64,000 nt of DNA from Adineta vaga. Lineage: Eukaryota; Animalia; Rotifera. Of this stretch, positions 44,073 through 47,351 are shown one piece after another (position 1 is the first letter of the stretch; each line of letters starts with the position of its first letter). The stretch spans positions 12,276,001 to 12,340,000 of the forward strand of contig CP075497.1 of NCBI GenBank assembly GCA_021613535.1, written 5' to 3'. Below the pieces are notes generated by a model. It made no database searches. It had not been told where the DNA came from and saw only the letters and a program-made list of their open reading frames with translations. The position numbers and the translations under genes are program-made.

Positions 44073-47000
44073 TCATTTCTTTTTCTTTGAATTACTATTT
44101 GTTCTATCTTGAAAATAACTACTCGTTGTTGGTGTATTTGCTTCACGTTTTCGTTTCAAACTAGTATTCATCGAATCATCTTGATTTTCTTCATCTAACT
44201 TTGATCCAAATAAACAAGTGATTGTCAATAATCGATCTAATTTATACAAATCATATTTAATAGTTGTCATTTCAATTGTTTTTCTTAGCATTTCTTCTTT
44301 GGTTCGAGGCATTGTTGTTGCCATTTGTTTCAAAGCTTTTTCACTTAATATTGTGGAATATTTGATACCATATTCAGATGATATCGATTTCAATTCTTCT
44401 TTTAATTTCGTCAAACAACTATCCACAAGACGACTACGTGTCGAAGAACTTGATACAGTAGTTGCAACATTCGGATTTTCTTTTTTCACACAAACAGATA
44501 AAGTAATTGGGTCAGAAAACGTCGTATTCTTTCCAAGACGAATATAAGCACTAGCTGTACCATACGTATCGTTAATTGATATATCTTGATGAAGATAACC
44601 ATCCATAATTAATTTCGATAATAGACGTTCTAAATCTAAACAAATAAATTGAGCATTGATGTTTGAAGACATATGTTGAGCTTACTAATCCGAGGAATAT
44701 CTTCTGCAATATTGAATTGTTCTAATTGATCATGTCCTGCATCTTTAATTGCTCTTTGTTTACTTCCTTTCAGAATATCAATCACTTGATTTAGTGTTGC
44801 TGTTCGCATGTTTTGTGTCAGTTGATCAACTAATGCAAGAATTTGTTTAGATAATTGAGTAAAATCAACTAATTTTGTTTGAGCCACACTACAACAATTA
44901 TCACATCGTGTTTCGACATGTTTTTTACATTGACTTGAAAGATATTGTTCACCAAAATATTCAAGTAATAATGTTCGACGACAGTCGACATTATTTAAAC
45001 AATAAGCATAAACACGATGTAGATTATCTAGTCGAACTTTTTTTGCATCACGTATTGCATTGGGTGATTGTTCAGCTAGAAAAAGTCTTAATGATTGTAT
45101 GAAACTGATAGATTTTCAATTGTTGAATCGTCATACTCATGATTAGACGTTTTGTTTTCACTAAATCTTGATAACAATAGAAAAGATAACAATATGCTTG
45201 TTCACCATCACGTCCTGCTCGACCTGATTCTTGATAGTAACCCTAAATTTAAATACAAAAAACATCCTTTCCCTTTTCTTCTGTAAGAAAAAGAACAAAC
45301 TTCAATTGATTTTGGCATCGATAAATGAATAACAAAACGAACATTTGGTTTATCGATTCCCATTCCAAAAGCAATTGTTGCACAAATCACTTGATATTCA
45401 TCATTTGCCCATTGAGTTTGAACATTTGCTCTCTCTTGATCTTCTAAACCAGCATGATAAGCTTGTGCTGTTACTCCACTTTTCGACAGATATTGTGCAC
45501 TTCTTTCACATTCAGCACGTGAAAAACAATAAACAATTCCACACAATCCAACAAATTGTTCACTTAAACATAATTGCACTGTACGAGCTAATGCTCCATC
45601 AGTTTTTCCTTTGGTAAAACATTTATAAACAAGATTTGATCGATTAAATGATTGAATAAATAATTTTGAGAGATGTCTTTCGATCTTCATTTGATGAAGC
45701 ATATCGCGTTGAACACGAGGAGTTGCCGTTGCTGTTAACAATGTAAATGGAATATTTGGATATCGTTCACGTAATGTACCGATTTTAACATAATCAGGAC
45801 GGAAATCATGACCTACATATAATGATGAGAAAATAAAACTATCAGTAGAAGATATTATCCTACCCCAATCGGAAATACAATGTGCTTCATCAATAACAAA
45901 TCTGGCTAAATTATTTTTCATATAAAGATGAGAGAATAATTTATTTACTTGATCACTTTGACCAATTTTTTCTGGTGTTATATAAACAAGTTTTAATTTT
46001 GGTTCTGGAGCATAACACTTAGCATAAATTGCTGAAACTTCAGCTGGAGTCCGATCACCAGTTAATGCTGCACATGGAATACCTAATGATGAAAGTTTTT
46101 GAGTTTGATCAAGAATTAATGAACGAAGTGGAGATACAACAAAAGTTACGCCATGATCAAGAACAGCTGGTAATTGATAACATAAAGATTTACCACCACC
46201 GGTTGGCATAAGTACAAAGAGATGATAACGCCTTTCTAATGCACAATTAACAGCTTCTTGTTGATTTGATCGAAATTTTCTTAAACCAAATAAAGCATGA
46301 AAACGCTCAAACATTGTTTTTGTATGACTAAATTCTTTATCTCGATATTCTGGTCCATCATCATGAACATCTGCTGAAATCCATGTTACTTTATCACATT
46401 CTTCATCATCTTCATTCGATGGAATAGTATTAGATGTTTCAAAATCATTCGTGTCATCATCATTATCATCAAATGTTTTTATTGATTTTAATCGGGATTT
46501 TTTTAAAGAAGATGAAGATGATTGATCAAGTGACCAATCATCAAACAACGCATCTTCGAAATGATTTAAATCGTTCGATTGATTTCGATTTGAATGCGTG
46601 TCCAATGACTAAAAGAATAAAACGAATAAAAAGATTTCGTCAAATGGATTAACCTACCGAAAAATCAAATATTTGTGGATTTAATTCTTCTTCGTTTTCT
46701 TCTTCTCGTTGACATAAACTACATCCAGTTGCTTTAATCATAATGGCTTTAAAACATTGAAAACATGTTGTGTGTCCACAAGCATCATTGACTGGACGAT
46801 GAAGACCTACAGTATCGAATGGAATTTGACAAATTGGACATTGAGTATTTGATACAGTTTGTTGTTGAGTTGGTGTCGGTAAAGAAGAACAAGAAATCGA
46901 TCGGTGATAAGTTGTTGATGGTAGAGTAGATGGGGTTGATGATGCAGAAGGAACATCAACGATAGGTGGACTTGGTTTTGGATGATTGACTCGAATGGGT

Positions 47001-47351
47001 GGTTTTTTCAAAGGAGTGGTATCGCGTTTAGGTTGATTGACTTGAATTGATGTTTTTTTTAATGGTGTAGAATCGCGTTTTGTAGAAAATGAAAGAGATA
47101 ATTGTGTTGGAATTGTTTGCCGATGTTTTTGTAATGGAAGCGGTGGTTGATCTGGTATATGACGAAATGTTAATCTGATATGAAGAAATTTCAAGTTAGT
47201 TGATTTTAATGAAGAAAAATAGATATTCTCACTGAGATGATATTCGATTTTCTGAATAATTTATTCGATTTTGTATTGCTTCATCACGATAAGTATAATA
47301 AATTTTTAATTGTTCATTTAAATTATTCTTAATTGCTGGTCGACTTTTCAT
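44073..47351 (-). CDS. BLM: BLM-type RecQ DNA helicase with in-frame N-terminal C3HC4 RING finger
   Basis: N-terminal KNNLNEQL (compare BLM QNNLQEQL). Motifs [72 protein letters not shown] Zn site (CRR...CDNC), HRDC and basic tail. Introns 47232-47175 and 46657-46609 place the RING exon in frame. Confidence 0.9.

What the first reader, a model, noticed from the sequence alone, without database searches (positions are those of the whole stretch)
46600..47351. BLM-type helicase carrying its own RING finger
Seen: exon 2 encodes [43 protein letters not shown]. Phase-compatible short introns link it upstream to the BLM-like KNNLNEQL exon and downstream to the helicase exon. Known: characterised BLM/Sgs1/Rqh1/HIM-6 proteins have no RING and rely on separate E3 ligases. 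Inferred: a helicase-E3 ligase fusion coupling DNA unwinding to ubiquitylation, notable if the host is a desiccation- and radiation-tolerant bdelloid. I do not know of a description of this fusion but cannot search for one.
Basis: partly seen in the sequence, partly recalled or inferred. Interest (0 to 1): 0.8.

Follow-up and report, generated by a model that had tools for sequence, protein, structure and literature searches.

The report
RING finger in rotifer Bloom helicase
The bdelloid rotifer Adineta vaga really does encode a Bloom-syndrome-type DNA helicase with a conserved RING zinc finger ahead of the helicase, but this layout was published in 2018, it is also found in a parasitic thorny-headed worm, and its ubiquitin-ligase activity has never been tested.

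Summary
On the minus strand a 7-exon, 983-codon BLM-type RecQ gene (47351..44073) has a C3HC4 RING (46840..46712) in exon 2. Exon 2 joins exon 1 (BLM N-terminal motif KNNLNEQL) and exon 3 (linker and helicase) in phase across 58- and 49-nt GT-AG introns.

The fusion is not a gene-model artefact:
- The public A. vaga model and Rotaria and Adineta orthologue models use the same joins.
- Two paralogues in this genome and many environmental bdelloid contigs carry the RING and the start of the helicase in one uninterrupted ORF.
- Within the A-type orthologues the RING is 86% identical, like the helicase core (89%) and unlike its linkers (43% and 64%).

It is not new. [quoted passage not shown] This window holds their copy "A" (HRDC-bearing, induced after desiccation).

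New here:
- The acanthocephalan Pomphorhynchus laevis BLM also carries the RING.
- Didymodactylos has an unannotated RING exon.

The fusion therefore seems to predate bdelloid desiccation tolerance. E3 activity remains untested, and the RNA-read check could not be run.

This scan had already flagged the same fusion at paralogues elsewhere in this genome.

The parts
47233..47351 (-). Exon 1: start codon ATG at 47351..47349 and the conserved BLM N-terminal motif ([12 protein letters not shown]). It ends in phase 2, with the GT donor at 47232.
   Evidence: Sequence read. The same motif occurs at residue 8 to 13 of chelicerate BLM orthologues and in all bdelloid copies. The join matches public model P0155.
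47175..47232 (-). Intron 1, 58 nt, GT...AG.
   Evidence: The C5 paralogue has the motif and the RING in one ORF with no intron.
46658..47174 (-). Exon 2 (517 nt): a Pro/Ser/Thr-rich linker followed by the RING finger.
   Evidence: A whole-library phmmer search finds 8 strong hits, all bdelloid-like fragments.
46712..46840 (-). C3HC4 RING domain (43 residues).
   Evidence: All 8 zinc ligands are invariant in 21 sequences. The profile matches the RNF4 and TRIM32 RINGs at about E 1e-08 to 2e-08. The AlphaFold model core has pLDDT 74 to 83, and most of the best Foldseek matches, including the top fourteen, are RINGs, though with weak E-values. It is 86% identical among A-type orthologues.
46609..46657 (-). 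Intron 2, 49 nt, GT...AG, phase 0.
   Evidence: This intron is absent in the C2 paralogue, in metagenome ORF P0005 and in several environmental loci, where the RING and the helicase start share one ORF.
45864..46608 (-). Exon 3: acidic linker and helicase lobe 1 (motifs I and II, DEAH).
   Evidence: Pfam DEAD E 1.6e-20. 77% identical to Rotaria sp. Silwood2 P0029.
45301..45812 (-). Exon 4: rest of lobe 1 and helicase lobe 2. It follows a 51-nt in-frame intron (45863..45813).
   Evidence: Pfam Helicase_C E 9.4e-15. Joins read match P0155.
45137..45242 (-). Exon 5: end of lobe 2 ([13 protein letters not shown]).
44686..45075 (-). Exon 6: RecQ zinc-binding region and start of the RQC winged helix.
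   Evidence: Pfam RQC E 1.2e-12. PF16124 is precomputed for P0155.
44073..44635 (-). Exon 7: end of RQC, HRDC domain, basic tail, stop TGA at 44075..44073.
   Evidence: Pfam HRDC E 7.7e-07. Sequence read.

Best explanation
This is the single-copy 'A' paralogue of the Adineta vaga Bloom-syndrome helicase (BLM/Sgs1 orthologue, 983 codons). A C3HC4 RING finger sits in its N-terminal regulatory region, between the conserved BLM N-terminal motif and the acidic linker that leads into the RecQ core. The RING is translated as part of the helicase protein. It was gained once, before bdelloids and acanthocephalans split. It survived the later duplications into A, B and C copies and is under purifying selection as strong as that on the helicase core. 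Those steps are shown. The following is inferred. The most likely role is that the RING recruits a ubiquitin- (or SUMO-) charged E2 to wherever the helicase is bound, so that BLM modifies itself or its partners in cis. In vertebrates separate ligases such as RNF8, RNF168 and MIB1 do that job (this point is from my own knowledge). I put about 0.5 on real E3 activity. The rest falls mostly on a non-catalytic zinc-finger docking or dimerisation role. The architecture itself was already published for A. vaga in 2018.
For: Gene model and phases were read directly and are identical to the public A. vaga model P0155 and to Rotaria sp. Silwood2 model P0029. ORF continuity without introns holds in several places. 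The C2 paralogue has RING plus helicase start in one ORF. The C5 paralogue has N-motif plus RING in one ORF. Metagenome ORF P0005 and environmental loci L018, L020 to L023, L026, L027, L029 and L030 show the same continuity. RING-bearing full-length models exist in R. sordida, R. socialis, R. magnacalcarata, Rotaria sp. Silwood1 and Silwood2, A. steineri and A. ricciae for A, B and C types. Pomphorhynchus laevis P0240 has a RING at residues 172 to 209, on an exon 41 nt upstream of the helicase exon. Didymodactylos carnosus has an unannotated, phase-compatible RING exon inside an annotated intron. All 8 zinc ligands are invariant in 21 sequences. Region identities among A orthologues are RING 0.86, helicase core 0.89, flanking linkers 0.43 and 0.64. 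The profile matches the RNF4 and TRIM32 RINGs at about E 1e-08 to 2e-08. In the tree, bdelloids and Pomphorhynchus lie on one side of a 100/99 split from 11 other metazoan BLMs. [quoted passage not shown]
Against: The single sequence is below every Pfam RING gathering threshold. The structure model is only moderately confident (mean pLDDT 67), and all Foldseek E-values exceed 0.1. For E3 activity specifically, the residue after the last cysteine is Q, K, E, A, N, T or L rather than a conserved Arg or Lys, and the Pro after the seventh ligand is absent in bdelloids. Pomphorhynchus has Q where other copies have the E2-facing Ile or Leu. The Pomphorhynchus branch is long (1.35), so its placement is uncertain. 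The state in monogonont rotifers is unknown.
Confidence: 0.85

Rival explanations
1. The RING is a conserved but non-catalytic zinc finger. It would serve as a dimerisation or docking module, as in MAT1 or the inactive partners of RING heterodimers. It might replace the vertebrate BLM N-terminal oligomerisation bundle that these proteins lack.
For: There is no conserved basic linchpin after the last cysteine, and no Pro after ligand 7 in bdelloids. The profile also matches the MAT1 RING (E 0.0016). PMC6264785 notes that most metazoan Blm lack the BDHCT region. Residues beyond the ligands are strongly conserved ([17 protein letters not shown] is almost invariant), which fits any binding surface.
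Against: The best sequence and fold matches are active E3 RINGs (RNF4, TRIM32, Cbl, Pirh2). All bdelloid copies keep the Ile or Leu between the first two cysteines that usually faces the E2. Many active RINGs lack a linchpin Arg (my own knowledge).
Confidence: 0.35
2. The fusion is a gene-prediction artefact. The RING exon would belong to a separate small gene or be skipped, with the helicase translated from a downstream start.
For: No RNA reads were inspected. Public automated models at this locus are clearly unreliable in other respects. P0155 merges SKP1, BLM and a downstream partial duplicate, and the Didymodactylos model skips the RING exon.
Against: The RING and helicase start lie in a single uninterrupted ORF in the C2 paralogue and in many environmental bdelloid contigs. 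The BLM N-terminal motif lies upstream of the RING, and in the same ORF in the C5 paralogue. The order motif, RING, helicase is kept in A, B and C copies and in an acanthocephalan. There is no in-frame stop or separate terminator between the parts.
Confidence: 0.03
3. The real product is larger: a conjoined SKP1-RING-BLM protein made by skipping the last SKP1 exon, which would physically tie an SCF adaptor to the helicase.
For: Automated models in three species (A. vaga P0155, Rotaria sp. Silwood1 P0149, R. socialis P0151) all join SKP1 after ...NDFTPQE to an open stretch just upstream of the BLM start. SKP1 lies about 300 nt upstream on the same strand, and this adjacency is conserved between genera.
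Against: SKP1 has its own terminal exon and stop codon (47709..47660 region). Other models of the same gene start at a Met a few residues before the BLM motif (P0150, P0152, P0153, P0029). Gene finders commonly merge closely spaced same-strand genes. There is no transcript evidence.
Confidence: 0.08

Closest known systems
Adineta vaga Blm copies A, B1/2 and C1/2 as described by Hecox-Lea and Mark Welch 2018 (BMC Evol Biol 18:177, PMC6264785)
   Same: It is the same gene family in the same species. [quoted passage not shown] The window copy has an HRDC. This haploid-style assembly has three loci, on C6, C2 and C5.
   Different: The paper gives two sentences on the domain and never uses the word ubiquitin. 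It gives no distribution outside A. vaga. It reports only a general DEAD-like helicase domain for copy A, whereas DEAD, Helicase_C, RQC and HRDC all score here and the RecQ zinc-binding region is precomputed for P0155.
Canonical BLM / Sgs1 / Rqh1 / HIM-6 RecQ helicases
   Same: It shares the N-terminal NNLxE[QH]L motif, the acidic linker, the DEAH helicase core, the RecQ zinc-binding region, RQC and HRDC. The best non-rotifer hits are named BLM at 43 to 50% identity.
   Different: They have no RING. None of the other 104 proteins listed, nearly all BLM orthologues of other phyla, has a C3HC4 pattern ahead of motif I. One of these is the Didymodactylos model, whose RING exon is unannotated. They are modified by separate ligases (my own knowledge).
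Rad5 / HLTF / SHPRH (SNF2-family ATPases with an embedded RING)
   Same: One polypeptide combines a nucleic-acid motor acting at damaged forks with a RING E3 module. This is a precedent for helicase-ligase coupling.
   Different: They belong to a different motor superfamily branch (SNF2, not RecQ). Their RING is inserted inside the ATPase domain rather than N-terminal to it. There is no homology beyond the generic RING and SF2 folds (my own knowledge, not tested here).
RNF4 and TRIM32 RING domains
   Same: These are the closest solved RINGs by profile (E about 1e-08 to 2e-08) and by fold rank (TRIM32 first). They share the CP[IL]C...CGH..C.QC pattern.
   Different: The similarity is generic to C3HC4 RINGs. 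The rotifer RING lacks the RNF4 linchpin Arg and C-terminal dimerisation tail. No SUMO-interaction motifs or TRIM B-box and coiled coil were seen.

Membership tests
BLM subfamily of RecQ helicases | SF2 helicase core with DEAD/DEAH and Helicase_C domains | tested here: met
   PF00270 E 1.6e-20 and PF00271 E 9.4e-15
BLM subfamily of RecQ helicases | RecQ C-terminal region: zinc-binding subdomain and RQC winged helix | tested here: met
   RQC PF09382 E 1.2e-12. PF16124 is precomputed for P0155, which contains this gene. The Cys cluster CRR...C...CDNCC was read.
BLM subfamily of RecQ helicases | HRDC domain | tested here: met
   PF00570 E 7.7e-07
BLM subfamily of RecQ helicases | Orthology to BLM rather than RECQ1, RECQ4, RECQ5 or WRN (best hits, N-terminal motif) | tested here: met
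   The top non-rotifer hits are annotated BLM. The NNLxE[QH]L motif near the N-terminus is shared with chelicerate BLMs. Other RecQ paralogues were not included in the tree.
RING-type (C3HC4) E3 ubiquitin ligase domain | Eight zinc ligands with canonical cross-brace spacing | tested here: met
   C-x2-C-x16-C-x-H-x2-C-x2-C-x10-C-x2-C. All eight ligands are invariant in 21 sequences.
RING-type (C3HC4) E3 ubiquitin ligase domain | Significant match to curated RING models | tested here: inconclusive
   The single sequence hits eight Pfam RING families (best E 4.3e-05), all below gathering scores. A profile of orthologues hits solved RINGs at about E 1e-08 to 2e-08.
RING-type (C3HC4) E3 ubiquitin ligase domain | RING fold | tested here: inconclusive
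   The AlphaFold model has mean pLDDT 67 and core pLDDT 74 to 83. Most of the best Foldseek matches, including the top fourteen, are RING domains, but the best E is 0.15.
RING-type (C3HC4) E3 ubiquitin ligase domain | E2 binding and E2~Ub activation (hydrophobic E2-facing residues, linchpin Arg or Lys) | tested here: inconclusive
   Ile or Leu between ligands 1 and 2 is kept in all bdelloid copies. The linchpin position is variable and not conserved basic, and Pro after ligand 7 occurs only in Pomphorhynchus.
RING-type (C3HC4) E3 ubiquitin ligase domain | Zinc binding and ubiquitin-ligase activity | not testable with these tools
   This needs biochemistry.
Rad5/HLTF/SHPRH helicase-RING ligases | SNF2-type ATPase with the RING inserted between the helicase lobes | tested here: not met
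   The motor is RecQ-type and the RING lies about 110 residues N-terminal to the helicase core.

The most novel reading that the evidence does not exclude
The RING is a working E3 (ubiquitin or SUMO-targeted) module that the BLM helicase has carried since the common ancestor of bdelloids and acanthocephalans. The whole clade would then run BLM regulation or substrate ubiquitylation in cis at recombination intermediates. That would be a RecQ counterpart of Rad5/HLTF, not described outside one domain diagram for A. vaga.
Probability: 0.4. Interest if true: 0.6.

Novelty: already known. Interest (0 to 1): 0.3.

Why it matters
BLM is a central anti-recombinase, and separate ubiquitin and SUMO ligases control it in studied organisms. 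A lineage in which the ligase-type domain is built into the helicase offers a natural experiment on how that control works. Bdelloids rely heavily on DNA double-strand-break repair and gene conversion. The presence of the same fusion in a parasitic acanthocephalan argues against a special adaptation to desiccation or radiation. The practical gains here are three. The first is a corrected gene model for this locus, since the public model merges SKP1, BLM and a partial duplicate. The second is a missed RING exon in Didymodactylos. The third is a wider phyletic range than the 2018 paper reported.

Tried and rejected
2. Whole-library phmmer with exon 2. It gave only 14 hits. Eight were strong fragment ORFs from bdelloid-like contigs. 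The longer hits (Ptychodera, Polarella) are unrelated RING or zinc-finger proteins without a helicase. It was too insensitive to see even the B and C copies.
3. PDB search with the 40-residue exon 1 peptide. It gave only chance-level hits, so there is no structural handle on the N-terminal motif.
4. Literature searches. 'RecQ + RING finger + rotifer' and 'RecQ helicase + RING domain + domain architecture + fusion' gave 0 papers. The 2025 ISS transcriptome paper only lists a BLM gene in an expression table.
5. Foldseek against PDB. Most of the best matches are RINGs, but none has E at or below 0.001. I treat this as consistent, not as proof.
6. Metagenome scan. The pattern it derived is bdelloid-specific, so it could not address monogononts.
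7. RNF4-like STUbL origin. The TRIM32 match is equally good, so no specific RING subfamily can be named.
8. Joined spliced protein. Exons were searched by reference one at a time, and full-length comparisons used database proteins returned by the tools (P0155 and others).
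Full report
**What is in the sequence**

The finding lies on the minus strand of an AT-rich (30% GC) eukaryotic window with very short introns. Reading 48200..41700 on the minus strand gives a seven-exon gene:

| Exon | Coordinates | Content |
|---|---|---|
| 1 | 47351..47233 | ATG; [19 protein letters not shown]... |
| 2 | 47174..46658 | Pro/Ser/Thr-rich linker, then the RING |
| 3 | 46608..45864 | Acidic linker and helicase lobe 1 |
| 4 | 45812..45301 | Rest of lobe 1 and lobe 2 |
| 5 | 45242..45137 | End of lobe 2 |
| 6 | 45075..44686 | RecQ zinc-binding region, start of RQC |
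| 7 | 44635..44073 | End of RQC, HRDC, stop TGA |

- The coding sequence is 2949 nt, which is 983 codons counting the stop (982 residues).
- All introns are 48 to 61 nt with GT...AG ends, and every join keeps the reading frame.
- It is the only C3HC4 pattern in the six-frame translation of the window. None occurred in 100 dinucleotide-preserving shuffles.
- Pfam finds DEAD (E 1.6e-20), Helicase_C (9.4e-15), RQC (1.2e-12) and HRDC (7.7e-07) in the downstream exons.
- Pfam also finds eight RING families in exon 2 (best E 4.3e-05), all below their curated cut-offs.

**Whose genome it is**

The assembly has 100.8 Mb in 6 contigs, and the window is C6:12276001-12340000. The public protein 'hypothetical protein I4U23_031156 [Adineta vaga]' (P0155, 1403 aa, on a 13.9-Mb contig) contains this gene. 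All seven BLM exons of the window are recovered, with the joins derived above, and the two exons that matter here, exons 1 and 2, align at 98 to 99% identity. The lower figures for other pieces come from tblastn reading through the short introns. P0155 is a chimera. It joins the upstream SKP1 gene without its last exon, then the whole RING-BLM gene without its last seven residues, then the first of two downstream partial RecQ duplicates.

**Is the RING really part of the helicase protein?**

The case therefore rests on comparative evidence, which is strong.

1. The same genome has two diverged paralogues with the same order of parts, on C2 and C5.
   - In the C2 copy the RING, the acidic linker and the first helicase motif (...YPHTKTMFEVFDNIFGLRQ) lie in one uninterrupted ORF.
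   - In the C5 copy the KNNLSEQ motif and the RING lie in one ORF.
2. Independent gene models join motif, RING and helicase in the same way. They come from Rotaria sp. Silwood1 and Silwood2, R. sordida, R. socialis, R. magnacalcarata, Adineta steineri and A. ricciae, for all three paralogue types.
3. Prokaryote-style ORF calls on metagenome contigs do the same.
   - P0005 (227 aa) runs from the RING to LMPTG of helicase motif I without a stop.
   - Of 16 environmental loci, 15 have the exon 3 homologue close by: directly downstream of the RING in 14, and in L019, where my pattern found no RING. The one without (L015) is a 1.1-kb contig that ends too soon.
   - In nine loci (L018, L020 to L023, L026, L027, L029, L030) the RING's open reading frame runs on into the exon-3 homologue.
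4. Conservation by region among the A-type orthologues of Adineta and Rotaria:

| Region | Identity |
|---|---|
| RING | 86% |
| Helicase core | 89% |
| Linker upstream of RING | 43% |
| Linker downstream of RING | 64% |

I did not build or search a joined spliced protein. Exons were searched one at a time by reference. Full-length comparisons used database proteins that the tools returned.

**Is it a RING?**

- All eight zinc ligands are invariant in an alignment of 21 sequences covering A, B and C copies and an acanthocephalan. So is a surrounding CP[IL]C...RP[IV]...CGH..C.QCF signature in the bdelloids.
- A profile of this alignment matches solved RING domains: TRIM32 at E 1.3e-08 and single RNF4 RINGs at 2.2e-08. 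Roquin-1, Cwc24, RNF146, COP1, BRCA1 and MAT1 also match.
- An AlphaFold model made from the alignment has mean pLDDT 67, with 74 to 83 across the RING core.
- Most of its best Foldseek matches in the PDB, including the top fourteen, are RINGs (TRIM32, Pirh2, Cbl-b, TRAF3, RNF168, Bre1). E-values are weak, as expected for a 45-residue domain.
- The residue after the last cysteine is a basic 'linchpin' in many active RINGs (my own knowledge). Here it is Q, K, E, A, N, T or L and is not conserved.
- The proline after the seventh ligand is present only in Pomphorhynchus.
- The hydrophobic residue between the first two cysteines is kept in every bdelloid copy.

The fold assignment is therefore sound. 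Catalytic competence is open.

**Is it BLM?**

- The best non-rotifer hits are annotated Bloom syndrome helicases at 43 to 50% identity.
- The exon 1 motif recurs as P.NNL.E[QH]L..F at residue 8 to 13 of horseshoe-crab, spider and scorpion BLMs.
- From memory it also matches the human BLM N-terminus. I did not test that here.

**Is it known?**

Yes. Hecox-Lea and Mark Welch, BMC Evol Biol 2018 (PMC6264785), report the following:
- A. vaga has five Blm copies: two allele pairs, B and C, and an unpaired copy A.
- Only copy A has an HRDC.

The window copy has an HRDC, and the genome has three loci (C6, plus the C2/C5 pair). It is therefore their copy A. The paper never mentions ubiquitin, proposes no ligase function and does not look beyond A. 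vaga.

Two other first-reader notes of this scan flag the same fusion elsewhere in this genome. One follow-up reached the same verdict. I had found the paper before reading that note.

1. The fusion is not bdelloid-specific.
   - The BLM model of the acanthocephalan Pomphorhynchus laevis (P0240, 1066 aa) has CPQCNNLYDRKKKRRISEACGHMICLTCSSTNDDCPLC at residues 172 to 209.
   - That RING lies on an exon (L013:12111-12305) only 41 nt upstream of the large linker-plus-helicase exon.
2. The annotated Didymodactylos carnosus BLM (P0157) lacks a RING, but its locus has one.
   - Inside an annotated 1.1-kb 'intron' there is a clean exon of about 4002..4142 that encodes CPVCQLMYDSETRRQITDACGHQMCFKCFIRLNADGCLFC.
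   - It is preceded by another unannotated exon at about 3649..3767.
   - Both exons are phase-compatible with the annotated flanks.
3. None of the other 104 proteins listed, nearly all BLM orthologues of other phyla, has a C3HC4 pattern ahead of helicase motif I. One of them is the Didymodactylos model discussed in point 2.
4. In a maximum-likelihood tree of the helicase core, bdelloids plus Pomphorhynchus are separated from 11 other metazoan BLMs by a 100/99 branch. Within bdelloids, A separates from Didymodactylos plus B plus C.
   - The Pomphorhynchus branch is long, so its placement is provisional.
   - The simplest reading is a single gain before bdelloids and acanthocephalans split, followed by duplications in bdelloids.
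   - The state in monogononts and seisonids could not be checked with the searches left.

**How it probably works**

- Shown: one polypeptide carries, in order, the BLM N-terminal motif, a variable linker, a constrained RING, an acidic linker and a complete RecQ core with RQC and HRDC.
- Inferred: the RING most plausibly recruits a charged E2 to sites where BLM is engaged, for self-modification or modification of neighbours. I give this about 0.5.
- Main alternative: a non-catalytic docking or dimerisation finger, at about 0.35.
- Minor possibilities: a gene-model artefact (0.03) and a genuine SKP1-RING-BLM conjoined product (0.08). These overlap with the two functional readings, so the four figures are not meant to sum to one.
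The desiccation-responsive expression of copy A (PMC6264785) may still matter for its use.

**Verdict**

This is a real, conserved and correctly read feature. It is already in the literature as a domain observation, and nobody has characterised its function. It counts as already known, with a modest extension in phyletic range and corrections to public gene models.

Noticed in passing
window 47660-48351 (-): A complete SKP1 gene (SCF ubiquitin-ligase adaptor) lies about 300 nt upstream of the BLM start on the same strand. Automated models in A. vaga (P0155), Rotaria sp. Silwood1 (P0149) and R. socialis (P0151) all splice SKP1 after ...NDFTPQE into an open stretch just ahead of the BLM start codon. 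The adjacency is therefore conserved across genera. Whether any conjoined transcript exists is unknown.
   Followed up: partly
window 41973-42764 (-) and 39957-40739 (-): There are two tandem partial copies of the 3' part of the BLM gene. Each starts inside exon 4 ([13 protein letters not shown]...) and carries the same in-frame deletion, which joins helicase lobe 2 (...AGLEDQE) to the pre-HRDC region (NPNV...). They are 89 to 100% identical to the parent. The public model P0155 swallows the first copy.
   Followed up: partly
L014:3649-4142 (Didymodactylos carnosus, GCA_905249995.1 CAJNOK010000089.1): The annotated BLM model (P0157) skips two phase-compatible exons, one of which encodes the RING. 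It also appears to be merged at its 5' end with a C2H2-jaz zinc-finger gene.
   Followed up: yes
L002 (G000:C2:3945017-3948295) and L003 (G000:C5:10586021-10589425): These are the B and C paralogues of the RING-BLM gene in the same genome. They have different intron positions. There is no intron between RING and helicase start on C2, and none between N-motif and RING on C5.
   Followed up: partly
L013:7300-8600 (Pomphorhynchus laevis): A reverse-transcriptase-like ORF sits in the 6-kb intron upstream of the RING-bearing part of the acanthocephalan BLM gene. It is probably a retroelement insertion.
   Followed up: no
P0009, P0012 (Ptychodera flava): Hemichordate proteins carry two to four tandem copies of a RING of similar pattern (CPTCNKxFDLVTIRPLIDTCGHVRCSLC...), some fused to C2H2 fingers. 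They are unrelated to helicases and appeared only as weak RING hits.
   Followed up: no
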